A DNA stretch of 63,998 nucleotides, the filler included, from Octopus bimaculoides (lineage: Eukaryota), in assembly GCF_001194135.2 (NCBI RefSeq). It is 3 parts of 3 records of this genome, joined end to end, with 100 filler letters (N's around TTAATTAATTAA, not from the genome) between each part and the next. Parts side by side here need not be neighbours in the genome. Positions count along the whole stretch, not along the records: positions 28,973 to 59,832 come from NC_069002.1; 2 more parts are not named here. One strand, 5' to 3'. Positions within the stretch are counted from its first letter, which is position 1. Every line of letters starts with the position of its first letter. The translations under genes were made by a program, and so were the position numbers. This document shows, piece by piece, positions 30,753 to 59,800 of this stretch. Under the pieces are notes generated by a model. The model searched no databases. It saw nothing but the letters and a program-made list of their open reading frames with translations, and was not told the origin of the DNA.

Positions 30753-32203
30753 GTCTAGCCCACCCCACATGTCAACTTTATGTAAATCTATGATCCTGTG
30801 ATCGAAGACATGTGTGACCATTCTGTCTATATTTTTTAGACAATGTATCTAAGACTACATTATTGAATGTGTTTTTTATTTAAGAAGATAAAGTGATATG
30901 AGATTTGACAGCTATTTCTAGCAGGTTAAGTAACCACATAGATGCATCCTTATTGATTTGTTATTGCTGCTGTTTAGCCCCCCCCACCCAAACGTCAGTT
31001 ATCATTCTATCTTTTATCGATTAAGGCTACAAGTGCTAACAGTGTGCCAAAGGGGTGTCTAGGATTTAAAAAAATGTAACTGAAAGATTTTGAAAATCTA
31101 TGCAAATGTTGAAGTGTCTTGAACAATTTGTTAGCCACAATTTTGTTATACGAAAGTTTTGTTAATAAAGTGAGAAGCAATTGTTTTCTATATTTTCTCT
31201 AAATCTTTAACTTTAAACAATGTTTCGTTTTTAACTTCCCATGTGAAGTACACCAGTAATGATAGCAATCCACCTGGGACTGTCCTTCAGTTCTGATACA
31301 AGCTTCCTGTTTTAAAATGATCCAGATTAAAACCTTTCATCGAGATTTCATGTTGTTTAAAACACCAGATTAATTAATTACAAAGTTATTTTATACTCTT
31401 TTACTTGTTTCAGTCATGTGACAGCGGCCATGCTGGAGCACTGTCTTCAGTCGAGAAAATCAACCCCAGGACTTATTCTTTGGATGCCTAGTACTTATTC
31501 TATCAGTCTCTTTTGCCGAACCACTAAGTTACGGGGACGTACACACACCACCATCGGTTGCCAAGCGATGTTGGGAGGACAAACACAGACACACAAACAT
31601 ATACACACACACATATATATATATATATATGTATATATNNNNNNNNNNNNNNNNNNNNNNNNNNNNNNNNNNNNNNNNNNNNNNNNNNNNNNNNNNNNNN
31701 NNNNNNNNNNNNNNNNNNNNNNNNNNNNNNNNNNNNNNNNNNNNNNNNNNNNNNNNNNNNNNNNNNNNNNNNNNNNNNNNNNNNNNNNNNNNNNNNNNNN
31801 NNNATATATACGACAGGCTTCTTTCAGTTTCTGTCTACCAAATCCACTCACAAAGCTTTGGTCGGCCCGAGGCTATAGTGGAAGACACTTGCCCAAGATG
31901 CCACGCAGTGGGAATGAACCCGCAACCATGTGGTTGGTAAGCAAGCTACTTACCACACAGTCACTCCTGCGCCTATGTTAATTATTTTCAAAATTAACTG
32001 AAACAAAAGCAGTGTATTTCAACAGAAATGAGGAAAGGTTTAGTCTTCAGTTTGCTGCAAAGTCAGAAGGACTGGAATCACTGTAGCACAATGTGATTTG
32101 AAGGTGATGTAGGTGCTATTTTAGCAGGTTAAGCAACTACATAAATGCTCCCCTCATTAACTAATCATAGCTATAGGTGTCATTGATGTTGGTTGGTGCT
32201 TAC

Positions 32204-33349: not shown

Positions 33350-33808
33350 ACGTCTGGCATCCATGCCAACGTCGTCTCCCTCATTGGACACAAAACTCAG
33401 CTTGCGAAGACTTATTGGGGCAAGCGATAGCAAAATTGTGATGGCACCTGTGCCCAGCGTCGCCTTTCTGGCACTTGTACCTGCAGCATATGTAAGGACT
33501 TTCAAGTGAGATCGTTGCCAGTGCCCCTGGACTGGCTCTTGTGCGGGTGGCACATAAAATACACCATTTTGAGCGTGGCTGTTGCCAGTACCGCCTGACT
33601 GGCCTTCGTGCCGGTGGCATGTAAAAAGCACCCACTACACTCTTTGAGTGGTTGGCGTTAGGAAGGGCATCCATCTGTAGAAACTCTGCCAAATCAGATT
33701 GGAGCCTGGCGTAGCCATCTGGTTTCCCTAGTCCTCAGTCAAATCGTCCAACCCATGCTAGCATGGAAAGCGGACGTTAAACGACGATGATGATGATGAT
33801 GATGATGA
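33350..33808 (+). mobile_element. RTE-tail repeat family copy
   Basis: Same sequence family, with (GAT)n tail at 33786-33808. Confidence 0.85.
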
Positions 33809-34337: not shown

Positions 34338-34690
34338 ATCATCATCATCGTTCATCATCATCGTTTAACGTCCGCCTTCCATGCTAGCATGGGTTGGACG
34401 ATTTGACTGAGGACTGGTGAAACCGGATGGCAACACCAGGCTCCAATCTAATTTGGCAGAGTTTCTACAGCTGGATGCTCTTCCTAATGCCAACCACTCA
34501 GAGAGTGTAGTGGGTGCTTTTACGTGTCACCCACACGAAAACGGCCACGCTCGAAATGGTGTCTTTTATGTGCCACCCGCACAAGAGCCAGTCCAGGGGC
34601 ACTGGCAACGATCTCGCTCGAAGGATTTCGTGTGTTGACCGCACATGAGCCAGTCCAGGGGCACCGGCAACGATCCTGCTCGAAAAACCT
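34338..34690 (-). mobile_element. RTE-tail repeat family copy
   Basis: Reverse-complement copy with CATCAT tail at its left end. Confidence 0.85.
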
Positions 34691-37600: not shown

Positions 37601-39239
37601 TGGTCCTTATCCTATAAGTCTCCCCTGCTGAACAGCTAAGTTACAGGGACACAAACACACCAGCATCGGTTGTCAAGCAATGGTGGTGGTGGTGGGGGGG
37701 ACAAACACAGACACACACACACACACACACACACANNNNNNNNNNNNNNNNNNNNNNNNNNNNNNNNNNNNNNNNNNNNNNNNNNNNNNNNNNNNNNNNN
37801 NNNNNNNNNNNNNNNNNNNNNNNNNNNNNNNNNNNNNNNNNNNNNNNNNNNNNNNNNNNNNNNNNNNNNNNNNNNNNNNNNNNNNNNNNNNNNNNNNNNN
37901 NNNNNNNNNNNNNNNNNNNNNNNNNNNNNNNNNNNNNNNNNNNNNNNNNNNNNNNNNNNNNNNNNNNNNNNNNNNNNNNNNNNNNNNNNNNNNNNNNNNN
38001 NNNNNNNNNNNNNNNNNNNNNNNNNNNNNNNNNNNNNNNNNNNNNNNNNNNNNNNNNNNNNNNNNNNNNNNNNNNNNNNNNNNNNNNNNNNNNNNNNNNN
38101 NNNNNNNNNNNNNNNNNNNNNNNNNNNNNNNNNNNNNNNNNNNNNNNNNNNNNNNNNNNNNNNNNNNNNNNNNNNNNNNNNNNNNNNNNNNNNNNNNNNN
38201 NNNNNNNNNNNNNNNNNNNNNNNNNNNNNNNNNNNNNNNNNNNNNNNNNNNNNNNNNNNNNNNNNNNNNNNNNNNNNNNNNNNNNNNNNNNNNNNNNNNN
38301 NNNNNNNNNNNNNNNNNNNNNNNNNNNNNNNNNNNNNNNNNNNNNNNNNNNNNNNNNNNNNNNNNNNNNNNNNNNNNNNNNNNNNNNNNNNNNNNNNNNN
38401 NNNNNNNNNNNNNNNNNNNNNNNNNNNNNNNNNNNNNNNNNNNNNNNNNNNNNNNNNNNNNNNNNNNNNNNNNNNNNNNNNNNNNNNNNNNNTTATACAC
38501 ATCAATAAATGAGCCAATTGAACAACTCTGTGTGGTTGTTCAATTTGCTAGAAATAACAGCCAAATCTCTCTCATACTATGCCATTGTTAGTATTAAGGA
38601 AAGGGAAAAAATAGAATTAATATTTTTGATTTCCTTTGGCTCTATGTATTTAATTTTTCTTTTAAATGTTTTCGTCCATTACTTGATACAAGAAAAAAGA
38701 AATTGGAAAAATCCTGACCAAAACAGAGAAATTGTGACATAACAAAAAATACAGAAAGAGAAAGAAACGGTTGAATTTGAAAGCCAAAAGATGTCTTTTT
38801 AGCTGAGGTGTAATATTATAATTAAAACAAATTCAAAATTTAAATTTCAGAACATAAGCCTTACCATGTTATCTGGTGTATGACCGAATTCAAACGGGTA
38901 GAAGACCTAAAACAAATGCATGTGTGTGTGCGTTTGTAGTTGGGCCTTTAATAGCCAGGGGTCAATTTCAGTCTAATTGTAGAAAGGAAATCAAATACCT
39001 ATCAGCCACTCCCTCTCTCCTTTACCTAACACACATCAAATTTAAGTATCTTAATTTTCTCATTAAAATCATTGCTGCTTTGGTGGCCCAGTAGGCATGG
39101 GTGTTGAGAAGTAGTAATACAACACATAGGTAGTGGTTTCAAATCTCTTCCAGAAATTATAAGTGATCTAGTTAAGAATTTTTATTTAAGCAACAAAATT
39201 TTTTTTCATTAAGCATGACACATGCGTCAAGTACATACA

Positions 39240-41070
39240 AAAAACAAACTGGCATATTAATATTATTGAGAACTGTCTTAACAAATGCAGAAATCTCAGT
39301 TCTGGATGGATTGATTATAAAAAGGTCTTGAAATTGCTGGATATCTTCAAAATTTCTCCTGTAGTAATTTCAAACTTCCTGAAGTACAACATGTCAATGT
39401 GGGAGACAAATCTCCAATTATACTATTCTAATGGAGTACTGACCACAAAAAATACTAATATCAACTGCAGCATTTTCCAAGGTGACTCATTTTCACCTTT
39501 AATTTTCTGCATAGCCCTAATACCCCTTACAAGTGAACTTAACAAAACAGGGTATGGATATAAAATTGGTGATAAGAAAATAAGTCATCTATTTTATATG
39601 GATGACTTAAAACTCTATGGTAAAGACGATAATGAGCTTGAAGGATTACTATGTTCTGTGAAAGCATTCAGTGATGACATTGGGATGGAATCTAGTCTTG
39701 ATAAATGCGCCAAGGCCACTTTCCAGAAAGGGAAACTGAAGATCTCACATTCAGTCATAAAAGAACTTGAGGAGGAACAAACTTACAAGTACCTCAGAAT
39801 AAATGAGGGCTCTGGCATTCAGCATGCAAGCATGAAAGGGAAGATCAGGAAGGAGTATTACAGGGGAGTTCGAGCAGTCCTAAAATTCAAGTTAAATGCA
39901 CGTAACAAGGTGTTAGCTATGAATTCCTTAGCAGTTCCACTTGTTATTTACAGTTTCCATGTGTTGAAGTGGAATATGAGCAAAATAAGGAAGACTGATA
40001 GGAAAACCTGTAAGCTGCTGACTTGCAATAAGATGCACCACCCAAAGGCAGACGCAGATCGTCTCTACCTTCCCAGAGCTCAAAGAGGTCGAGGCTTGAT
40101 CCAATATAAAATCTTTTACAAAGCCACCAGAACTGGACTGACAAAATATCTTGAAACATCTAACCACTGGATGCTAAAGCTCCATTCTGTTATGAAGGAG
40201 AACAAAAAATTTTCAAGTGAGTTGATGCATAATACTCAGGTTGAACAGCATGAGGTAAGTATAGCAAATGTTGTTGGAAAAGAAGGTGAAATCAATAGCA
40301 AAGTAAAATGCGCTCGAACAATTGGATGATAGGTGGGAACAAAAACCTCTGCATGGCAAATATGTGGCCCGTAGCAAACAAGTTGATGTAGACCAGAAGC
40401 ACACCCATCAGTGGCTACAGAGCTCAGGGGTAAAGGCAGAGAGTCAAGGCTTTATCTTGGCTACCCCAGATCAGAGGTTACTGACCTAATGTGATGAAAA
40501 TGGTGTAGACCCAAAGTGCCAATACTGCAACTATAGGATAGAAACAGTTGACCACCTAATCTCTGGGTGTAAGGTTTTAGCACCTGTAGAGTACAAATCA
40601 AGACATGACGGCGTTGGCCAATGTCTACATTGGATAATGTGTCGGCATTATAAAATCAAAACTTCTGACAAATGGTACAAGCACCCCACTGAGGCTGTAA
40701 CTGAGGGAGAAAATGTAACTATTCTTTGGGACTTCCCAGTATGTACAGACCAGACCAGACCATAAAGGCAGATAAACCAGATATTGTTGTGAAAGACAAA
40801 AGCAATTAAGTCTATTTATTGACATGAGCATACCCTGTGACCATAATATCTCAGCAAAAGAATTTGATAAGCTCAGAAAATATAAGATTTGCTAATTGAA
40901 ATCGAAAAGATGTGGTATCGCAAGACCAATGATTGAAGGAGCACTTGGAAATGATCAAAAAAGGAATTGAAAATTATTTAAGAATGATCCCTAGCTTATC
41001 ATCCATGCAGGAAGTGCAAAATATCATCTTAACTCATACCTCACACGTATTGAGAAGAACATTGTTAGTG
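39240..41070 (+). mobile_element. 5'-truncated R4/Dong-like non-LTR retrotransposon (RT, CCHC knuckle, restriction-like endonuclease), disrupted
   Basis: ORF 39328-40329 has IFQGDSFSPL and SHLFYMDDLKLY. Downstream frames give CQYCNYRIETVDHLISGC and KPDIVVKDK, with stops and frameshifts. Confidence 0.85.
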
Positions 41071-42637: not shown

Positions 42638-42792
42638 TATGTATTTCTTCTATCTTAATGAATAAAAATTCTTCGGATAGAATAAATGGGTTAATAGAAA
42701 CCAATGTAGCAAAGAACACAAAATAACTGTGGTGTAGTTCCTGTTTTTANNNNNNNNNNNNNNNNNNNNNNNNNNNNNNNNNNNNNNNNNNN

Positions 42793-43350: not shown

Positions 43351-43650
43351 TGCGAGCGAGATCGTTGCCAGTGCCCCTGGACTGGCTCTTGTGTGGGTGG
43401 CACATAAAATGCACCATTTTGAGTGTGGCCGTTGCCAGTACCGCCTGACTGGCCTTTGTGCGGTTGACACGTAAAAGCACCCACTACACTCTCGAAGTGG
43501 TTGACATTAGGAAGGGCATCCAGCTGTAGAAACTCTGCCAAATCAGATTGGAGCCTGGTGTAGCCATCCGGTTTCACCAGTCCTCAGTCAAATCGTCCAA
43601 CCCATGCTAGCATGGAAAGCGGACGTTAAACGATGATGATGATGATGATG
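43351..43650 (+). mobile_element. RTE-tail repeat family copy
   Basis: Same family; tail ends ~110 nt from the SNX8 exon donor at 43762. Confidence 0.85.
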
Positions 43651-43762
43651 AGTAACTAGAGCAAAGAAAATTGTTTAAATGGATACAAGGGTGAAAGGGG
43701 GAGAAAAGAGGGAGGAAGAAAGGAGGAGAGAAAGAAGAGAAAAATTACAGATTTTGACTTAC

Positions 43763-43884
43763 CGAACCAACAAATGTAAGAAAACATTCAAATAACTTAT
43801 CGTTATGCATACGAGGATGTCGACCAATAATGTTAAGGTAGCGACGTAAAGATTTCCTGCGCTGCTCAATGAATTCACGATTGG
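43763..43884 (-). CDS. SNX8: SNX8 exon (PX C-terminal half)
   Basis: ttccag acceptor, gtaagt donor, 122 nt, phase 1-0. Encodes (A)NREFIEQRRKSLRRYLNIIGRHPRMHNDKLFECFLTFVGS. Confidence 0.95.
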
Positions 43885-44381
43885 CTGGAATGAAATGGAA
43901 AATTGTTTACGATTCAAAGTTTAAAAATTTTATACAATTAGAAACTATTTTTTGAAAGCCTACAAAGCTGCAAGATTTATTTTATGTATATACATATATA
44001 TAATTTATTCCAACTCAAAAAACTTTGAAGTCCTTCACAATGTTTAAGTTGACATATTCAGTTGGAATCAACATAAGAGACAAAATTCAAATTAATAAAT
44101 TCACAGGCGAAGTGAACCAGAAATATCAACAAATACCATGATGTATTTTTTATTGATACTGGTCTATCTATTCTATCTCCTGCCTCCCACCCACAACTGA
44201 CTCTCTCTCTCTGTTTATATATATGAAAATATAATTGTCACTAAATGTGACTAAGGATGCCAAGACACCTACATTGCTAGAAATAGAAGCTAAAATGCTA
44301 TAATGCTGTAGGAAAAGCACATAATTGCATACATATATGCTCACAAGAGCTGTAATCGCCCAAAAACACTGACTTGAGAAT

Positions 44382-44434
44382 TCCCTATACCGAATGTTCA
44401 GTTTCGGCTATTTCTGTAGCCTCTTCAGTAAGGA
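44382..44434 (-). ncRNA. Type I hammerhead ribozyme motif, structurally complete
   Basis: Minus strand: TCCTTA CTGAAGA GGCTA CAGAAA TAGCC GAAA CTGA ACAT TCGG TA TAGGGA. Stem I 6 bp, stem II 5 bp, stem III 5 bp, core CUGANGA/GAAA, GUA cleavage triplet. Confidence 0.85.
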
Positions 44435-44566
44435 CTGCTCATTAGGCTGTTTCTACGCTTACTCCACCATCAGCACATATGCATTTACCATAAAAATTTA
44501 TGGATGATTAAGTGAATTGCTAATGTGTATACAAAAATTAGTATAAACAGCCATGCGCAATGTGTT

Positions 44567-44729
44567 CATCATCATCATCGTCGTTTAACGTCCGCTTTCC
44601 ATGCTAGCATGGGTTGGACGATTTGACTGAGGACTGGTGAAACCGGATGGCAACACCAGGCTCCAATCTAATTTGGCAGAGTTTCTACAGCTGGATGCCC
44701 TTCCTAACGCCAACCACTCAGAGAGTGTT
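44567..44729 (-). mobile_element. Short RTE-tail copy inserted into the HHR tandem repeat
   Basis: Same family; possible GTGTT duplication at 44562-66 and 44725-29. Confidence 0.8.
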
Positions 44730-44866
44730 AGCATAAAAGAAAATATAGTTTTCACTAAATGTGACTAAGGGTGTCAAGATATCTACATTGCTAGAAGTAT
44801 CTTATTTCAAGCAATGGAAATTTTGACACCTACAATGCTCTGATGCTATAGGAAAAGCATATATTA

Positions 44867-45002
<136 letters not shown>

Positions 45003-45159
45003 TGTACAGATTTTATATATTAAGAAAAAAGAGATAAACAGAATTTTGGATAATTATTTATTCAGCACTTTCATCTTACTTTGGGGAATCATCAGAAATT
45101 ATTCTTTTACAGAAAATTTATACCTTTTATGCCATCATCATTATGTGTGTGTGTGTGTA

Positions 45160-47198
45160 TTAGGTTGTCTCACATGAAATGTTGCACTTGAAAAAGGAAA
45201 CATTAAAATTGTTTTTAAGTTTTAGAAGATTTATTTATTTAATAAAAAAAATGTGATCCTTGATCATTTATGATCTTCATCCAACGTTCCTCTAAGGCAT
45301 CTTCAAAGAACTTGTCATCTGATAAACTGTTTGAAAGCTTCAATTACCTCTTCCTTATTTAAGAATGTTTTATTGCGGATAGCAAACTCGAAGTGTTTAA
45401 ATATGTGATAATCAGTAGGAGAGATATCAGGAGAATAAGGAGGATGTGCCAAAATTTCCTAATTCAGGCTTTGCAACTTGTGGACGTAGCTTGAGAGGTG
45501 TGAGGCCGTGCATTATCATGAAGCAAAATTGAGCCATCTCTAGTCACTAATCTGGGTTGCTTCTTTGTTAATTTTTTGACCCGCTGGATGTGTAATGTCA
45601 ATATGCATACACAACAGAGTGTAAGTGCCCTGAGAGAAAAGTTGGGCATAAGAAGCATCAAATGTGGTGTGCAAGAGAGATGATTGCACTGGTATGGTCA
45701 TGTGTTACGTATGGATGAGGACAGCTGCGTGAGGAAGTGTCACTCCCTAACTGTGGAAGGAACTTGTGGAAGAGGTAGACCCAGGAAGACATGGGATGAG
45801 GTGGTGAAGCATGACCTTCGAATATTGGGCCTCACAGAGTCAATGACAGCAGACCGAGACCTTTGGGGATACACTGTGATTGAGAAGACCCAGTAACTAA
45901 AGTAAGATGGTAGCCACGCATGTCTGGCCCAAACAAGAGTACCCCTGTGGTTTCGTGCAATATGATATGCTTGAGAAGACCTGTTGAGTCAAGTAAAACC
46001 AATATCGTAGCTGTGGCCAATACCCACTGACTGGCTCCCATGCCGGTGGTACGCAAGAAGCACCATCCGAATGTGACCAATGCCAGTACTCCCGACTGGC
46101 TCTCATGCTGGTGGCTCGTAAAAAACACCAACCGAATGTGGCCGATGCCAGTACTCCCTGACTGGCCCTTGTGCCAGTGGCACATAAAAAACACTATCCA
46201 AATGTGATTGGTTCCAGGCCCGCCTGACTGGCTCCTGTGCCAGTGGCACGTAAAAAGCACCCAGTACACTCTCAGAGTGGTTCGTGTTAGGAAGGGCATC
46301 CAGCTGTAGAAACATTGCCAAATCAGATTGGAGCCTCCAAACCTCAGTCAAACCGTCCAACACATGCCAGCATGGAAAATAGACGTTAAATGATGATGAT
46401 GATGCATACAATCAACTACCTGGCAACAGGATGTTGTTGTTATAGTTTTTCTTTGTTGCAAAAATGAATAATGAATAACCCCCTTTGTTGACCACCATAC
46501 AGTGACCATCAATTTTTTAGGATGCAATGGTGGCTTTGGGTAGTGTTTTGGTGACTCTCCTGTGTCTAATTATTGTCTTGTCCTCCTGCTGTTATCAAAG
46601 AGTATCCATTTCTCAAAGCACATAATGAGTCAGTACAAAAATGGTTCTCTTTCCAACCGAGAAATCAACATGAAACGTACTGTAAGGTGTCTGTTTCTTC
46701 GAATCTCATATTTTTTGACTTTTCCAAGTTTCTTCAAGTGTCAAGAAGCAGTTGTGGGAGATGTCTGGAGCTCTGATCCGATTTTTCGTACCATTGTTCG
46801 CGGAATTCGTTTAACCAAGGCATTCAATTCCTCATGCCAGATAACTGATTTTGGTCTCCCTCTTGGTTCATTTTTAAGGCTTTCATTTCCTGAACGAAAT
46901 CTATGGAACCATCTCTGAACAGTTCTAATATCAACAGAATCATTACCAAAACCCCACTTGATGGTCCATAGAGCTTTGGTGGCAGAGTGACCCAACTTGT
47001 ATTCGTACAAGAAAATCACTTGGTATTGTTCAGTTGTCATAAGAGCTGTGTGTAGCAATTTTGAATAATAGTATTGTCTAGAAAAAGAAGACTTGAGAGT
47101 AAACACAAGCATATACACAGAAACTCATTAAAATCCATTTCTAGATGACTCATAAAAAACCCATTTATAATAGGACATTTCATGTGAGACAACCTAAT
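45160..47198 (-). mobile_element. Near full-length mariner transposon (DD34D), inactivated, split by an RTE insertion
   Basis: ~24-bp TIRs TTAGGTTGTCTCACATGAAA(A)TGT with TA duplications at 45158-59 and 47199-200. Transposase remnants FLYEYKLGHSA..TVQRWFHRFRSGNESL, LLHDNARPH, HPPYSPDISPTDYH. Confidence 0.92.
45581..46404 (+). mobile_element. RTE-clade LINE 3' fragment with 3' UTR and (GAT)n tail
   Basis: Encodes LHWYGHVLRMDEDSCVRKC..GRGRPRKTWDEVVKHDL, then a repetitive UTR and a GACGTTAAATGATGATG tail. Confidence 0.85.
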
Positions 47199-48326: not shown

Positions 48327-51300
48327 AAGGGCTTAGATATAACGAAGTTGCTGTAATTCAAGTTGTGTGCATGCATGCACACACACACACACACAGATAT
48401 AAATGTCTGCATAGAGAAAGACCGAATGAACTAAACAGAACAGGAGGAGACACATGTAATTCAATCATGAAGAGGAATGTTTTATCTTTATTTTGATATA
48501 AAATCGATGGGGATAGGTCAGATAATTATTAGAAAATAGAAAGGTGAAAATTTTATAGTCAAAATGGAGAAAAATCCCACTTATATGGGTGTCCTGATCC
48601 GAAATTCTACCGTTTATAGCTATTTTAAATAGTCTATCAAAATATTACTGAAATGGTGTCATGTCCCAAAACCTCAAGATTTATTTAGTTCTATACCTAC
48701 AAGAAATGTGCCAAAACTCAAGTCCCTGTGGTTTGTACTTTTGAAATTAACTAGGTCTGAAAACAGCAAAATTGAAAAAATACATCCATTTTAGCAAACT
48801 CACTTTCTAACTGCAACTCACAACTCACTTTACAAATTTTCTGCATGAAACTATTTCCCTCCTTCACTCAACTGATATTCTCTGCATCCAATTCATTCCG
48901 TACCTCTAATAATATTCTCACTCTAGCACACTGACCTACATATCTACCTTTTCCTCAATCCTAGTTTGTCTCTGATATTCACCATGTACCTTGTCTTTTC
49001 AGCAAGACACCTACTCCTGTCCCTCTATTTTAGTTTCTTATCCCTCAATTCTATAACCCCATTCAGTTGTGAGGTCTTGTCTTGCAGGTACTTGGTGACC
49101 CCACCCATGCTGGTGTCATGTAAAAAAGCACCCAGTAACACTCTGTGAAGTGGTCAGCATTAGGAAGGACATCCATGCCAAAGAAGACATTAGAACTTAG
49201 TGCAGCCGATGACAGTACCGAATGGAACAATAAACCCCCCCACTACCACACTACGCAACATGATGACTAAAGACAGAAGTGGGAGAGATACAAACTGTAT
49301 AGTACATAAACCCGTATACACACAAAAGACACACATACGAATACTTAAGATGAAATGAAAAAAGAGATAAAGTAAATAAACACGAGAAAAAAACTATATA
49401 AAGGACATGGATACAAATGATATAGTAAGCAAACACAGACATGTGTACACGCATGCACACACACAGATTTAAATGCATGCACAGAGAAAGACCGAATGAA
49501 CTAAACAGAACAGGAGGAGACACATGGGATGGAAGAGCTACTGAAGAGGTTACAGGTGTGTGATAAAAGTTTTCTAGACAATGGACATAGATAAAATAAG
49601 AACAATAATAAACGAGTGAAGAATGAATATATAGTGTGTGTGTTTATTTGACAAGAAAAAAAAAACCCCTGAAACAATTCTTGTTTAGAATGGTGGAATT
49701 CAAAAGTTGATAAAAAGCTCCTATGATGTCAGCAACAATTAATTCTCCCTCATAGAAATAAAGTTTCTAAAATGAATAGAGAAATTTGAAGAATTACTTT
49801 GGTCCAGCAGTAGAACACCTGCCATATCTACAAGAGATGTGGGTTCATGTTCCACAGGTAGCCTTCAGATTTTTCTCTCAATGATGTTACAAGACAACAG
49901 TCTGGTATGCAAATATTTGAAAAAGAACAAAAATTCTTGTTACTAGAGCCAATACTTTTGATTGCTACTGACTTGGTCTAGACTTTAAAGCATAAAAATT
50001 GATGATAGAATTGTAACCAAAATTAGAACTTGACTGACAATAGATTAATACCACAAGCAGAATGGATTGAGAGATTGTGTTCTCTGGGCATCTGCATGGA
50101 GCAATATTATCAGAGCAGAGGCCTAGCCCAAACTGTAACAAAATCTGAGTGTTATTGAGATCAGTAGTTTTTGTCTTTTAAAAATTAATTCTGAAGGATA
50201 AAATCTAGTTCGAGATACAAATGAGTGGAATCAGAACTTGTTAAGAGCAAATATCAATTATTGCTCTTTTGGCCTCTATCAACAAACCTACAATTCATCT
50301 GAGTTCAATATGTAGAATAAATTTGTAGAAAATGTTAAGTACTGGTGATAGTGCAATGTAAAAAGTAGTAAAAAGCACTGGTGATGATGCCATGTAAAAA
50401 ACACCCAGTATGCTCTGTGAAGTGGTTGGCATTAGGAAGGGTATCCAGCTGTAGAAGCGAAGCCAAAACAGACAAAGGGACCTGGTGTGGTCCTTAGCTT
50501 TGCTAGCTCCTGTCAAGATGTCCAACCCCTGCCAGCACGGAAAATGGACATTAAATGACAATGTGAAAAAAACTTTTACTTTTTACTTCTATTTTAAAAA
50601 GCTAATCAAGGGTTGAAGTGGATTAGTGTCCCTGATCTTTGCAAGCTCTCTCAGGAATATTTACTCACACAATTGTTTGCAAGAAAGCAAGAAATTAATT
50701 AGCTACAACAATGTAATTACGTATTTAAAAAAAATATAACTGCAATATATCTAAACAATCTGATAATATGATATAATACTTTATGTAGCACATCAACCAG
50801 TACCAGTGTGTACAGGTCAGAAATTAAGAACAATAGTAAACTTAGGATATCTTAGCAGTTAATTCATAAAAATAACTACAGGCATGGTTGTATCATTAAG
50901 AAATTCACTTCCCAACCATGTGGTTTCAGGTTCAGTCTCACTGTATGGTACCTTGGGCAAGTGCCTTCTATTATATTCTGGGATCACTCAGATTTTGCTG
51001 ATTAGATTTGGGACACAGTAACTGGCAGAAGCTCATTGTGTGTGCGTGTGTGTGTGCGTGTGTGTTTGTGCTTGTGTCTCCTTGTCTAGACATCACTTGC
51101 TAACTGTAAACAAGCATCACCATCATATACCATGGGGCAATAAAAATTCTGGGTTCCACAAGAAATAAAAAGTGAATTAGTTTTTGTGTTTTTAGGACAG
51201 CTAAAATGGCTTTCCAACAATGTAGTTACATTTTAACAAACATAATGTAAACTTAGTTGTTCCTAAAAAGACAGCATGGTCTCAGCTGTTCTAGTTGAGT

Positions 51301-55405: not shown

Positions 55406-56666
55406 CTGAAATTGAAAATTGAAAAGATAATAATAATAATCATCTCTATTATAGACACAAGGGCTGAAATTTGGGGGAGGGGAATATATCGACCCCAGTG
55501 TTCAACTGGTACTTAATTTATCGACCCTGAAAGGATGAAAGGCAAAGTTGACCACATCGTAATTTGAACTCAGACCATCAAGATGGACAAAATGCTGGGA
55601 GAGAGGATTAGTCGATTACATCAAACCAGTGCATAACTGGTACTTATTTAATTAATCCTGAATTTGAACTCAGAATGTAGCAACGGCCAAAATACTGCTA
55701 AGCATTTCATCCAACATGCTTACGATTCTGCCAGCTCACTGCAACAAGCTGCATTAAACTGCATCCAGTGATGAGGCTTATGTTTGGGAGTTCTGGATTT
55801 GTGGGGAGGATGAAGTTATCCCTTAATTACCATTACACCCAGGTGTGTTCTGACCTGGAACAGTAGTACCTGTCAGGGTCTGATCATACGTTAACCTTTC
55901 AACATCTTTCATAAAGCAACCACTCTTATTCTCCCCCCTCAGCCAAGGAGTTTATTTAGTTTAGTAAGTTACAAGGCAAATTCACTAGTATTGGTGTCAT
56001 GAAAACATGCACCAAGTACACATGTAAAGCAGTTGGTGTTAGGAAAGACATCAGTTGTAGAAAACATACCAAAATCGACACAGTGGAGCAAGACAGTTCT
56101 CCAGCTTGTTTCCATGCTGGAATGGTTAACCCATGCCAGCATGGAAAGCAGACATAAAAATTATGAAAAATACAATCAGCTCTGGTAGAATTCGAATTCA
56201 GAATACAGAACACTGAAAAGATTTGATTTGCTACTCCATGTTTACTGCAGCTTTACTCATACAATTAATTGATGATTCACCATCTTTCAATGGTAAACTA
56301 ATTGTACCTACGTTGGCCTTATAAAAGCCAACGAGAGACTACTCAGAGAATGTCTAAGTAGTCAAAATTGATTACAGGCCTGTTCAATCAGACTCAGCCT
56401 GAATTAACAGGTCTAACATGTTCTTTTTTAACATGATAAGGTGTGATTTGAAGGAATCTACCTGCTATTTCTAGCAGGTGAAATAACCAGATAGAGGCTC
56501 TCTCATTGGTTCAAGCAGTCTAAGTAATCATAAGTGGATTACAGGACACCACAGACATCTAAAACTGATAAACCATCTGAGAAGATATAATTTTGATGGG
56601 GTCATTTCATGATATTTTGAGGTTTAATGTTGGATAAAGGGTACTAAACCCTTACTGAGATGAATA

Positions 56667-56968
56667 TCATCATCATCATCGTTTAACGTCCGCTTTCCAT
56701 GCTAGCATGGGTTGTACAATTTGACTGAGGACTGGTGAACCAGATGGCTACACCAGGCTCCAATCTGATTTGGCAGAATTTCTACAGCTGGATGCCCTTC
56801 CTAATGTCAACCACTTCGAGAGTGTAGTGGGTGCTTTTACGTGCCATCGGCACGAGGGCCAGTCACACGGCACTGGCAATGGCCATGCTCAAAATGGTGT
56901 ATTTTATGTGCCACCTGCACAGGAGCCAGTCCAGTGGCACTGGCAACGATCTCGCTCGAATGTCTTTA
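56667..56968 (-). mobile_element. RTE-tail repeat family copy
   Basis: Same family in reverse complement. Confidence 0.85.
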
Positions 56969-57486: not shown

Positions 57487-59166
57487 TGTATGCAAAGGTA
57501 TGGTTGCATTGCTAGAAAGTTTGCTTCCCAACCATGTGGTTTCAGGTTCAGTTGCAGTGCATACCTCAGGCAAGTGTCTCCTACAATAGCTCAAACCCAA
57601 CCAAAGCTTTGTGAGTACAATTTGGTAGACATACATACATTCACATATATAGGCGCAGGCATGGCTGTGTGGTAAGAAGTTTGCTTTCCAACCACATGAT
57701 TCCAGGTTGTCTTATTGCATGGCAACTTGGGCAAGTGTCTTCTAATATAGCCTTTGGGCTGACCAAAGGAAAGGTGGATAGGTAGGGAAATGTGCTAGAC
57801 TGAAAAGTATGTGATAGATAATGATATCAATAATTCTACTTTTGGCACAAGGCCAGCAATTTTAGGGGATTACATCACTCTCTAGACTGGTGCTTTATTT
57901 TAACAACCCCAACAGGTTGAAAGACAAAGTTGACCTCAGTGGAATTTGAACTCAGAACACAAAGGGCTGAAATGCTAAGCATTTTGTCTGATGTGTTATC
58001 AATGCTGTCACCTCACCAACTTAATAATAAGCATGTCTACAGTTGCAGCTACCTTATGTGTCCCAAGCTACAACTTCTCTATGCCTGAACAGCTATAGCA
58101 AGCTAGTGACTCTATCATGCAATTATTTTTCACTGATAGAGTTGGCCACACAGATAATTACAACAACCTTTAACTGACCTTGTTAAAGAAAGCCTAATAA
58201 CAAAAAGACAAAATAACTTATACACAACTGCTAAGGAAATCCCTCTGGTATTGCACTGACATATTAAACTTTGAAGCATAAAAGTTCAAAAGATAAGAAA
58301 TGATCACTAAAAGTCAAGAGTTATGAACAAGGAAAAATCAATTTATAAATGGTTTTATTGTTTTCAGTTACATATTTTATTCTATTATCACATCATTAGT
58401 TTTACGACAGTTTTACAATAGGCTTTAAAGATTATTAACAATACAGAGAATATCATTATTACAATAGTGACAGTGTAGAAACTACCTTTGTGGCATTCAG
58501 TTAAAGCTTTGTTTGTTCTGAGTTCAAATCCTATGGAGATCAGTTTTGCTTTTCACCCTTTGGAGGTTAATAAAATAAAGTACCAGTTAAATACACATCA
58601 TGATTTAATTAAGTAACCCTACTTCTTTGAATGTTGCCTTGTGCCTATGAAAGAAATTATAACATAAATTATCACATAATAGATGCAACATAGCTGTGTG
58701 ATTAAGAAGTTTGCTTCCAAACCATGTGGTTTTGGATTCAGTCTTACAGCATGACACCCTGGACAAGTGTCCTACTAAAGCTCTAGGATTACCAAAACCA
58801 TCTGAGGGAATTTGGTAGCTGGAAACTAAAAGAAACTTATCATATATGATACATTTATATATAAATATGTATGTTTACATTTGCATTCTGCAGAAGCTGC
58901 TCATTTCCAATGACACTGCTATTGCTGTTGCTTCATCCGTCAAATCATTTAGTTGTTTTGTGCCTCCAAAATGTGATCTTTTATTTGAAATACAGGTAAG
59001 GTTTACCAAAAAGGAAAACCATAGCTGTCACTAAATATGATTAGGGTGTTAGAAGCACCTACATTGCTAGAAATAAGAGATAAAATGCTCTAATGTTGTA
59101 ATCAAAACAATTGTATACATATATACTGGTAGGGACTATAATCGCCCGAAAACACTGATCAAGAAT

Positions 59167-59216
59167 TCTTTATATTGACGTCAGTTTCAGCAATTTCCAT
59201 TGCCTCGTCATAAGAA
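59167..59216 (-). ncRNA. Degenerate hammerhead motif, same family
   Basis: Minus strand: TTCTTA TGACGA GGCAA TGGAAA TTGCT GAAA CTGA CG TCAA TA TAAAGA. C3 is lost and stem III has a mismatch. Confidence 0.7.
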
Positions 59217-59394
59217 TTTATGGATGATTTAGCAAATCACGAATGTGTATACATAAAATTAATATAGACAGTAGTATGCAATGTTTACCAAAAAGGAAAA
59301 TCGTAATTATGTACACATTAGTGATTTGCTAAATCATCCATAAATTCTTATAGTGATAGAGAATTCAGTCCGGAATCTGCTGAAGTCGAGCCAG

Positions 59395-59445
59395 TCTTTA
59401 CTGATGAGGCAATGAAAATTGCCAAAACTGACATCAGTATAAGGA
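59395..59445 (+). ncRNA. Type I hammerhead motif, same family as 44382-44434, with G12-to-A core substitution
   Basis: TCTTTA CTGATGA GGCAA TGAAAA TTGCC AAAA CTGA CA TCAG TA TAAGGA. All three stems pair; position 59424 is A where G12 is required. Confidence 0.8.
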
Positions 59446-59800
59446 ATTCTCAACTGATGCTTTCGGGCGATTATAGTTCCTACCAGTGTATATATATATA
59501 TATATATATGTACACAATTATGTGCTTTGACTACAGCGTTAGCGTATTTTAGCTCTTATTTCTAGAAATGTAGGTGTTTCTAACATCCTAGTCATATTTA
59601 TATTCTTTAGCTTGTTTCAGTCATTTGACTGTGGCCATGCTGGAGCACCGCCTTTAGTTGATCAAATTTACCCCAGGACTTATTCTTTGTAAACCTAGTA
59701 CTTATTCTATCGATCTCTTAGGCCGAACGACTAAGTTACAGGGATGTAAACACACCAACATCAGTTTTCAAGCAGTGAAGGGGGGACAAACACACACACA

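What the first reader, a model, noticed from the sequence alone, without database searches (positions are those of the whole stretch)
44375..44441. Structurally complete hammerhead ribozyme on the SNX8 pre-mRNA strand, ~500 nt upstream of a PX-domain exon
Seen: the minus strand reads UGAG-CAG-UCCUUA CUGAAGA GGCUA CAGAAA UAGCC GAAA CUGA ACAU UCGG UA UAGGGA-AUU-CUCA. Every catalytic core position is canonical. Stems I, II and III pair (6, 5, 5 bp), and stem I extends past a 3x3 internal loop (UGAG/CUCA). Known: natural type I HHRs use a stem I loop-loop II contact for activity at low Mg2+, and intronic HHRs are described in amniotes. Inference: the SNX8 intron could self-cleave after GUA (between 44388 and 44387), affecting splicing or releasing a small RNA.
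Basis: partly seen in the sequence, partly recalled or inferred. Interest (0 to 1): 0.9.

Follow-up and report, generated by a model that had tools for sequence, protein, structure and literature searches.

The report
Hammerhead ribozyme carried by a repeat element
The hammerhead self-cleaving RNA motif is really there and complete. It belongs to a roughly 300-350 base mobile repeat that has three other, broken or partial copies nearby, so it is most likely transposon cargo sitting in an intron rather than a device evolved to regulate the host gene.

Summary
The minus strand 44441..44375 is a complete type I hammerhead: CUGAAGA, GAAA, a GUA site, helices of 6, 5 and 5 bp, and cleavage between 44388 and 44387. 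A descriptor scan finds only this hit in the piece; 300 shuffles gave one relaxed hit and no strict hit.

The interpretation needs revising. The motif lies inside a 284-353 nt, 32-35% GC repeat family with four copies in this 30 kb:
- A (44213-44565, minus strand) has the intact ribozyme.
- A2 (44725-44883) is a 5'-truncated unit in tandem upstream of A, with a SINE-like repeat inserted at the junction.
- B (59001-59284) has lost the helix I 5' strand and C3.
- C (59307-59600, inverted) carries G12 changed to A.

Stem changes between copies keep the pairing, including one U-A/A-U swap in helix II. The closest known kind is the metazoan non-LTR retrozyme, a type I hammerhead in short AT-rich tandem repeats probably mobilised by Penelope-like elements.

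Three caveats apply:
- No Rfam hammerhead model reaches its threshold.
- An alternative helix that sequesters the core is predicted to be 1.7 kcal/mol more stable.
- The SNX8 name and the source organism could not be verified; only a PX domain is shown.

Verdict: a new member of a known kind. It is probably still able to cleave, and only incidental to the host gene.

The parts
44375..44441 (-). Intact type I hammerhead ribozyme, including the distal part of helix I. The core motif with 6/5/5-bp helices is 44382-44434.
44387..44388 (-). Predicted scissile bond: 3' of A17 (44388) and 5' of U1.1 (44387), after GUA (44390-44388).
   Evidence: Read directly.
44213..44565 (-). Repeat unit A, 353 nt, 35% GC. 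It begins ACACATTGC and ends TAAAC, and it carries the intact ribozyme.
   Evidence: Self-BLAST, alignment, nhmmer 344 bits, junctions and GC.
44566..44728 (.). A SINE-like repeat inserted at the A2/A unit junction. The same repeat is also at 43486-43648, 33637-33799, 34352-34508 and 56666-56825.
   Evidence: (92-97% identity between copies).
44725..44883 (-). Repeat unit A2: only the 3' third of a unit, in tandem upstream of A in the ribozyme sense. It has no ribozyme.
   Evidence: (101.8 bits, model positions 210-341).
44867..45000 (.). (TG)n(TA)n microsatellite that replaces the 5' part of unit A2, at the TA-rich spot of the unit.
59001..59284 (-). Repeat unit B, 284 nt. The ribozyme remnant at 59160-59212 has lost about 50 nt, including the helix I 5' strand and C3.
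59285..59306 (-). A 'tail' of about 22 nt that repeats the 3' end of a unit (TTTTCCTTTTTGGTAAAC), directly upstream of unit B.
   Evidence: junction sequences.
59307..59600 (+). Repeat unit C, inverted and 5'-truncated. Its ribozyme at 59387-59452 is complete except G12 to A (59424; AAAA in place of GAAA).
43765..43885 (-). Host-gene exon encoding the C-terminal part of a PX domain. It fixes the gene strand and the intronic position of unit A.

Best explanation
The motif is a genuine hammerhead ribozyme. It is the built-in self-cleaving module of a short (about 285-355 nt), AT-rich, non-coding repeat of the metazoan non-LTR retrozyme kind.

In such elements, head-to-tail units are transcribed. 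Each hammerhead cuts its own unit, the released monomer (5'-OH and 2',3'-cyclic phosphate ends) is ligated into a small circular RNA, and a retroelement machinery, probably that of Penelope-like elements, copies it back into DNA.

At this locus one unit (A) landed in, or was carried into, an intron of a PX-domain sorting-nexin gene in the sense orientation. Its ribozyme is still intact. The upstream tandem partner (A2) has lost its ribozyme, so no monomer can be excised here. At most the intron RNA is cut once, between 44388 and 44387, probably during transcription in the short time before a competing helix forms.

Shown here: the motif, the repeat family, the decayed paralogues, the tandem and inverted junctions, and the strand relative to the exons.
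Inferred: catalytic activity, circular RNA biology, mobilisation by Penelope-like elements, and that any effect on the host mRNA is incidental.
For: - Motif: complete core and helices, far above chance for the window.
- Family: nhmmer with the family profile finds exactly four copies in 30 kb, at 344, 307, 269 and 102 bits.
- The ribozyme is ancestral to the family. Copy C keeps every feature except G12A, and copy B keeps helix II, GAAA and the helix III region.
- Structure is kept across copies. 91% of pair cells are standard pairs, against at most 45% when partners are slid. Helix II shows a U-A/A-U swap, and the changes in helices I and III are G-U-type.
- Retrozyme-like traits: units of 284-353 nt with GC 0.30-0.35. 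There is no meaningful coding capacity: ORFs are at most 58 aa, and their translations find no protein relative.
- Head-to-tail junctions: the A2 3' end (..GCTAAC) is followed by the SINE-like repeat and then the A 5' start (ACACATTGC). A unit 3' end 'tail' is joined directly to the B 5' start (..GGTAAAC|ATTGC).
- The inverted 5'-truncated copy C next to a short tail, and the microsatellite association, match the insertion architecture described for Penelope-like elements (PMC8557442, read).
- Defining traits of non-LTR retrozymes are taken from PMC7229834. The link to Penelope-like elements is taken from bioRxiv 10.64898/2026.07.22.740005.
- Gene strand: three conserved exons lie on the minus strand.
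- Kinetic window: in prefix folding, the helix III hairpin is the minimum free energy structure until the 3' strand of helix I emerges.
Against: - No Rfam hammerhead model reaches its gathering score.
- No window locus shows two complete units each with a ribozyme, so the tandem criterion is met only through partial junctions.
- Genome-wide copy number is unknown. No further copy could be retrieved from any collection.
- The organism is unidentified.
- Nearest-neighbour thermodynamics favour an inactive fold. It scores -18.8 against -17.1 kcal/mol, with P(helix III) about 0.03.
- Loop-loop tertiary contacts cannot be assessed with these tools.
- Zero core mutations among about 9 changes in unit A is compatible with luck (P about 0.17, my estimate). 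It therefore shows neither selection nor activity.
Confidence: 0.75

Rival explanations
1. Same origin (repeat-borne hammerhead), but this copy is catalytically silent in vivo. The competing helix between the 5' core strand and the 3' strand of helix III, or missing loop-loop contacts, keeps it from cleaving. It would then be an inert relic with an intact sequence.
For: - The alternative helix is the predicted minimum free energy structure in the 67-mer and in contexts of +20, +50 and +100 nt and the whole unit.
- P(C3-G16.2) is 0.95 against P(helix III) of 0.03-0.04.
- Intactness of the core is not statistically remarkable given the divergence seen.
Against: - Energy models ignore the tertiary contacts that stabilise natural hammerheads.
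- Many natural hammerheads in viroid-like RNAs have more stable inactive folds and still cleave during transcription (established knowledge on Avsunviroidae; review PMC6155905).
- The helix III hairpin forms first in prefix folding.
Confidence: 0.3
2. One reading: a domesticated intronic ribozyme, like amniote HH9/HH10, that regulates splicing or abundance of the SNX8-like mRNA or releases a small RNA.
For: - It lies in the sense orientation in an intron, 502 nt upstream of an exon.
- The core is intact while the neighbouring paralogues are dead.
- The 5-bp helix III allows single-copy activity.
Against: - It is embedded in a recognisable repeat unit with its flanks.
- The ribozyme is barely more conserved than the flanks (75% against 68%).
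- There is no cross-species evidence. The only relative found aligns in exons only.
- In Xenopus such elements are common in introns (about 43%) yet depleted relative to intergenic DNA (bioRxiv 10.64898/2026.07.22.740005). That suggests genic copies are tolerated or deleterious rather than useful.
Confidence: 0.07
3. This locus is an active retrozyme source that releases a circular RNA monomer of about 350 nt.
For: Head-to-tail A2/A arrangement and an intact ribozyme in unit A.
Against: Excision needs two cleavage sites.
- A2 has no ribozyme, and nothing ribozyme-like lies beyond the microsatellite.
- A 163-nt SINE-like repeat interrupts the junction.
- B and C are both mutated and are in inverted orientation.
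Confidence: 0.03
4. A chance match to the hammerhead consensus with no biological meaning.
For: About 1 equally good chance motif is expected per 2.5 Gb genome, and the finding came from a large scan.
Against: Two paralogous copies carry the same motif one mutation or one deletion away from intact, with pairing-preserving changes. The expectation for this window is 1.4e-5.
Confidence: 0.01

Closest known systems
Metazoan non-LTR retrozymes (type I hammerheads in short tandem repeats; Cervera and de la Pena 2020, PMC7229834)
   Same: - Canonical type I hammerhead.
- Unit size inside the 150-450 bp range.
- Low GC (32-35%).
- No coding capacity.
- Head-to-tail junctions.
- Multiple copies.
- The family is reported in molluscs and many other invertebrates.
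   Different: - Only partial tandems are seen here.
- Helix III is 5 bp, longer than the 1-2 bp described for amphibian motifs.
- Copies are about 70-80% identical and mostly dead.
- Circular RNA and copy number are untested.
Penelope-like element pseudo-LTR hammerheads and their insertion architecture (PMC8557442; Cervera and de la Pena 2014, as cited in PMC7229834)
   Same: - Partial tandems.
- A short 3' end 'tail' at one side.
- An adjacent inverted 5'-truncated copy.
- Association with (TA)n microsatellites.
   Different: - Hammerheads of Penelope-like elements are minimal, with almost no helix III and no loop contacts. This one is full-sized.
- No Penelope-like reverse transcriptase or GIY-YIG reading frame is adjacent. 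The only reverse transcriptase fragment in the piece (39328-40329) is about 4 kb away, and its type was not determined.
Amniote intronic hammerheads HH9/HH10 (RECK, CTCL, DTNB; reviewed in PMC6155905)
   Same: Type I topology, intronic position and sense strand. The review describes them as derived from retroelement hammerheads.
   Different: - Those are isolated, single-copy and ultraconserved at orthologous positions. This one sits in a repeat with decayed paralogues.
- The Rfam HH9 and HH10 models do not match it.
- The genome does not look amniote: it is AT-rich and rich in SINE-like repeats, and the nearest protein matches are unnamed assemblies.
Schistosoma Sm-alpha and newt satellite 2 hammerheads (classical type I hammerheads in repetitive DNA)
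   Same: A type I hammerhead carried by a non-autonomous repeat of a few hundred bp, with an internal loop in helix I and a hairpin loop on helix II.
   Different: No tRNA-like head was detected (ARAGORN found nothing). There is no sequence similarity strong enough for the Rfam Hammerhead_1 model.

Membership tests
Hammerhead ribozyme, type I | Conserved core: C3 U4 G5 A6 N7 G8 A9, G12 A13 A14, A15.1-U16.1, H17 not G | tested here: met
   CUGAAGA, GAAA, U16.1, A17.
Hammerhead ribozyme, type I | Three helices around the core with helix I open (5' and 3' ends in helix I), and a G10.1-C11.1 pair | tested here: met
   helices of 6, 5 and 5 bp. Helices II and III are hairpins and helix I is open.
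Hammerhead ribozyme, type I | Loop 1 / loop 2 tertiary contacts | not testable with these tools
   The architecture is compatible: a 3x3 internal loop lies 6 bp from the core, and loop 2 is 6 nt in all copies (CAGAAA, UGAAAA, UGGAAA). The specific non-canonical pairs cannot be checked.
Hammerhead ribozyme, type I | Score at or above the gathering threshold of an Rfam hammerhead model (Hammerhead_1, HH9, HH10, II, 3) | tested here: not met
   - no hit at gathering score.
- none at E<=10 on 311 nt.
-, on 77 nt: Hammerhead_3 scores 21.9 bits (threshold 48.5) and RAGATH-1-hammerhead 14.9 bits (threshold 56.3).
Hammerhead ribozyme, type I | Site-specific self-cleavage giving 2',3'-cyclic phosphate and 5'-OH ends | not testable with these tools
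   Needs in vitro transcription or end mapping.
Metazoan non-LTR retrozyme | Repeat unit of about 150-450 bp carrying a canonical type I hammerhead | tested here: met
   Units are 353, 284 and 294 nt.
Metazoan non-LTR retrozyme | Head-to-tail tandem arrangement (dimers to multimers) | tested here: inconclusive
   Two head-to-tail junctions exist: A2 to A, interrupted by a SINE-like repeat, and tail to B. No locus has two full units with two ribozymes.
Metazoan non-LTR retrozyme | Low GC (<45-50%) and no coding capacity | tested here: met
   GC is 0.30-0.35. ORFs are at most 58 aa and have no protein relatives. LTR, PBS and PPT motifs were not formally searched; no long terminal repeats appear in the self-BLAST.
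Metazoan non-LTR retrozyme | High genomic copy number and expression as small circular RNAs | not testable with these tools
   There are four copies in 30 kb. The source genome and its transcriptome are not available. External scans were empty.
Amniote intronic hammerheads (HH9/HH10 type) | Isolated single-copy motif, not part of a repeat | tested here: not met
   the motif and about 280 nt of flanks recur at 59001-59600.
Amniote intronic hammerheads (HH9/HH10 type) | Conservation at the orthologous intron across species | not testable with these tools
   The only relative retrieved (Logan contigs L002 and L003) aligns in exons only, and it does not cover this intron.
Penelope-like element hammerhead | Minimal hammerhead (helix III of about 1 bp) within the pseudo-LTR of an element encoding reverse transcriptase and GIY-YIG | tested here: not met
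   Helix III is 5 bp. A scan for minimal hammerheads finds none in the piece. There is no adjacent reading frame of a Penelope-like element. Only the insertion architecture resembles these elements.
Sm-alpha-like SINE with hammerhead | tRNA-derived head with pol III boxes | tested here: not met
   ARAGORN finds no tRNA-like sequence in 43400-45100. Rfam finds nothing.

The most novel reading that the evidence does not exclude
Two readings remain open.

(a) The solo, sense-oriented, intact ribozyme has been co-opted to tune processing of the sorting-nexin pre-mRNA. That would be an invertebrate counterpart of the amniote intronic hammerheads.

(b) The family carries a selected conformational switch. 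A 7-bp helix pairs the 5' core strand (A2.1 to G8) with loop III and the 3' strand of helix III. It is kept in all three copies by covariation at N7, the only free core position: A-U, U-A and C-G. The ribozyme would cut once during transcription and then lock into an inactive form that protects, or helps ligate, the circular RNA.

The probability given is for (a), the more novel reading. I would put (b) at about 0.2.
Probability: 0.06. Interest if true: 0.7.

Novelty: new member of a known kind. Interest (0 to 1): 0.3.

Why it matters
If active, this copy cuts a host intron. It would be a natural example of transposon-borne ribozymes interfering with pre-mRNA, and it shows the raw material from which the conserved amniote intronic hammerheads are thought to have been domesticated.

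The family also falls below every Rfam hammerhead threshold. Genome annotations based on Rfam would therefore miss it and undercount ribozyme-bearing repeats in this lineage.

The partial tandem, tail and inverted-copy architecture gives independent invertebrate support to the recent proposal that animal retrozymes ride on Penelope-like machinery.

None of this changes current understanding. It extends a known class.

Tried and rejected
- **Rfam scans**. There was no hit at threshold. The weak Hammerhead_3 alignment is circularly permuted and recognises only the core. A miR-430-like hit at 44454-44519 (18 bits, E 0.76) is noise.
- **More family copies.**
  - A concatenate of the element's short ORF translations searched against 5.8 billion proteins found nothing.
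  - Exact-pattern scans of metagenome contigs with two patterns, viral contigs and prokaryotic genomes found nothing.
- **Organism and orthologous intron.**
  - The exon peptides found only three short unnamed proteins, at most 85% identical.
  - Their contigs are 0.9-2.4 kb, align only in exons, and do not cover this intron.
  - The run accessions and 20-mers from the SINE-like repeat are in no held paper.
  - The reverse-transcriptase ORF has no relative above 59% identity and none with a useful name.
  - From memory, the abundant SINE-like repeat and the composition look cephalopod (octopus-like). This is untested and should be treated as a lead only.
- **SNX8 identity.** Pfam sees only PX. 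The Protein Data Bank search ties SNX7 with Mvp1.
- **Penelope-type minimal hammerheads.** None are present in the piece.
- **Remainder of unit A2.** A search beyond the microsatellite found none; a mariner-like remnant follows instead.
- **Selection on the ribozyme at this locus.** Rejected as evidence. Zero core changes among about 9 is expected about 17% of the time.

Full report
**1.

The minus strand from 44441 to 44375 reads UGAG-CAG-UCCUUA-CUGAAGA-GGCUA-CAGAAA-UAGCC-GAAA-CUGA-ACAU-UCGG-UA-UAGGGA-AUU-CUCA.
- All invariant hammerhead positions are present: C3 U4 G5 A6 N7 G8 A9, G12 A13 A14, A15.1-U16.1, G10.1-C11.1 and H17 = A.
- Helices I, II and III have 6, 5 and 5 bp, with one G.U each in helices I and III.
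- Helix I continues as UGAG/CUCA beyond a 3x3 internal loop.
- GUA occupies 44390-44388, so the scissile bond lies between 44388 and 44387.

A descriptor scan of both strands of 28973-59832 returns only this site. In 300 shuffles, the relaxed descriptor (4/3/3 bp) hit 0.0033 times per shuffle and the strict one (6/5/5 bp) never hit. An analytic estimate gives 1.4e-5 per window, but about one such motif per 2.5 Gb. In a genome-scale scan the motif alone would therefore be only suggestive.

**2. Rfam does not recognise it**

No family reaches its gathering score anywhere in the piece, and nothing hammerhead-like appears at E<=10 on 311 nt. On 77 nt the highest-scoring hammerhead-clan model is Hammerhead_3 at 21.9 bits (threshold 48.5). 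Its alignment is permuted and sees only the core and helix II. RAGATH-1-hammerhead scores 14.9 bits with the correct type I topology. I attribute that to the long helix III and the family-specific loops, not to a defect in the core.

**3. The motif belongs to a repeat family**

Self-BLAST shows that 44236-44437 resembles 59026-59214 in the same orientation and 59392-59600 in the inverted orientation, at about 74%. It also shows that 44219-44285 recurs at 44733-44799. An alignment and an nhmmer profile search define four copies:
- A: 44213-44565, minus strand, 353 nt, intact ribozyme.
- A2: 44725-44883, minus strand, only the 3' third of a unit.
- B: 59001-59284, minus strand, 284 nt.
- C: 59307-59600, plus strand, 5'-truncated.

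Units begin ACATTGC and end TAAAC, and their GC content is 0.30-0.35.

The ribozyme in the other copies:
- Copy C has every hammerhead feature except G12 to A (AAAA for GAAA, at 59424).
- Copy B has lost about 50 nt, including the 5' strand of helix I and C3.

Pairing is kept across the three ribozyme copies. 91% of cells form standard pairs, against 31-45% when partners are slid. Helix II shows a U-A/A-U exchange, and helices I and III show one-sided G-U-type changes. With three sequences the shuffle control is not significant.

The ribozyme is thus an ancestral, structured part of the element, which removes the chance explanation. It is not clearly more conserved than its flanks (A versus C: 49/65 against 168/247), so nothing points to selection at this particular locus.

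**4. Arrangement of the copies**

Read in the ribozyme sense, the 3' end of A2 (..TTTTCTTTTATGCTAAC) is followed by a 163-nt SINE-like repeat (44566-44728) and then by the 5' start of A (ACACATTGCGC). This is a head-to-tail junction later split by the repeat's insertion.

A2 itself is cut off at the unit's TA-rich spot by a (TG)n(TA)n microsatellite (44867-45000). Beyond that lies unrelated sequence, including a mariner-like remnant, with no ribozyme.

At the other locus, a roughly 22-nt copy of the unit's 3' end (TTTTCCTTTTTGGTAAAC) is joined directly to the 5' start of B. The inverted, 5'-truncated copy C abuts that tail.

Partial tandems, a short tail at one side, an adjacent inverted 5'-truncated copy and a microsatellite association are the features described for insertions made by Penelope-like elements (PMC8557442).

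**5. Comparison with known elements**

Cervera and de la Pena (PMC7229834) define metazoan non-LTR retrozymes by these traits:
- canonical type I hammerheads within short tandem repeats (150-450 bp, dimers to multimers);
- low GC;
- no LTR, PBS or PPT motifs;
- expression as highly self-paired circular RNAs of 170-400 nt in cnidarians, molluscs, amphibians and many other invertebrates;
- Penelope-like elements as the likely mobilisers.

A 2026 preprint reaches the same link to Penelope-like elements in vertebrates. It reports that about 43% of Xenopus copies are intronic yet depleted relative to intergenic DNA. The giant squid genome paper lists 235 Rfam Hammerhead_1 hits (PMC6962438).

The present element meets the size, GC, non-coding and type I criteria. 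It meets the tandem criterion only through partial junctions. Copy number and circular RNA could not be tested.

It does not fit the other candidate families:
- Amniote intronic hammerheads (PMC6155905) are isolated and ultraconserved; this one is neither.
- Hammerheads of Penelope-like elements are minimal; none is found in the piece.
- Sm-alpha-like SINEs have a tRNA-like head; none is found here.

**6. Will it cleave?**

The 5-bp helix III with a tetraloop should allow single-copy cleavage. The amphibian motifs have a much shorter helix III (a single base pair in the classical type) and work as dimers.

However, the 5' core strand (UACUGAAG) is complementary to the 3' strand of helix III plus part of loop III (UUCGGUA).
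- The fold using this helix is the minimum free energy structure of the 67-mer: -18.8 kcal/mol against -17.1 for the hammerhead fold.
- It is also the minimum free energy structure of every longer context tested, including the whole unit.
- P(helix III) is about 0.03-0.04, and P(C3-G16.2) is 0.95.
- In prefix folding, the helix III hairpin is the minimum free energy structure until the 3' strand of helix I is made. This leaves a co-transcriptional window for the active fold.

The energy model ignores tertiary contacts. Hammerheads of viroid-like RNAs are known to have more stable inactive folds and still cleave during transcription (established knowledge). I therefore put catalytic competence at roughly 0.55-0.6.

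One unexplained point is that the competing helix is also present in C (-20.0 against -12.9 kcal/mol) and in B. N7, the one free core position, is A, U and C in copies A, C and B, and its partner is U, A and G. This suggests the inactive fold is itself maintained, possibly as a switch. Three sequences cannot prove it.

**7. Host gene**

Exons on the minus strand:
- 43885-43765: AG acceptor, GTAAGT donor, Pfam PX 31.9 bits.
- About 33290-33119.
- About 30387-30305. This exon and the previous one are conserved at about 76-79% DNA identity in a Logan contig of an unnamed relative.

The ribozyme is therefore intronic and in the sense orientation, 502 nt upstream of the PX exon.

The name SNX8 is not established. 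Pfam finds only PX, and the best solved-structure matches are SNX7 and yeast Mvp1, at about 22 bits each.

The organism could not be identified. The genome is AT-rich, rich in SINE-like repeats and microsatellites, and not obviously amniote. My recollection that the SINE-like repeat looks octopus-like is untested.

**8. Verdict**

This is a real, complete hammerhead ribozyme and a new member of the known class of retrozyme-type repeats. It sits by accident in an intron. No monomer can be excised at this locus, because the upstream partner lacks a ribozyme. At most the intron is cut once.

Decisive tests are listed separately: genome-wide copy census, orthologous intron comparison, in vitro cleavage with core mutants, and end mapping or circular RNA detection.

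Noticed in passing
window 44388-44428 (-), 59400-59438 (+), 59170-59212 (-): An alternative 7-bp helix pairs the 5' core strand (A2.1 to G8) with loop III and the 3' strand of helix III. It is present in all three ribozyme copies. N7 and its partner covary as A-U, U-A and C-G, and the helix is predicted to be more stable than the catalytic fold. It may be a cleavage/ligation switch.
   Followed up: partly
window 44566-44728, 43486-43648, 33637-33799, 34352-34508, 56666-56825 (weaker: 46266-46404, 50413-50563): An abundant SINE-like repeat of about 160 nt with a (CAT)n/(ATG)n end, 92-97% identical between copies. Its spurious ORFs read '..LAEFLQLDALPN..'. One copy is inserted exactly at the A2/A unit junction. 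No tRNA-like head or Rfam match was found.
   Followed up: partly
window 39328-40329 (+): A 333-aa ORF with a reverse transcriptase domain (Pfam RVT_1, 40 bits). The best database relatives are only 59% identical and unnamed. It looks like a retroelement fragment; its type was not determined.
   Followed up: partly
window 46741-47118 (-) and about 45240-45661 (-): Mariner/Mos1-like transposase remnants: HTH_48 at 51 bits, and a DDE-like tail '..LLHDNARPHTS..' with stop codons. Other repeats interrupt them.
   Followed up: partly
window 44454-44519 (-): A weak miR-430-like hairpin hit (18.2 bits against a threshold of 47.3, E 0.76) just upstream of the ribozyme inside unit A. I judge it noise.
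   Followed up: no
window 31639-31803, 37736-38492, 42750-42792: Assembly gaps (runs of N) flanked by (CA)n/(TA)n microsatellites. Sequence, including possible further repeat copies, may be missing there.
   Followed up: no
L001 (ENA metagenome scaffold ERZ23486243, 860 nt): A marine metagenome contig carries a PX exon 71% identical to the window's, so animal DNA is present in that 'metagenome' assembly.
   Followed up: no
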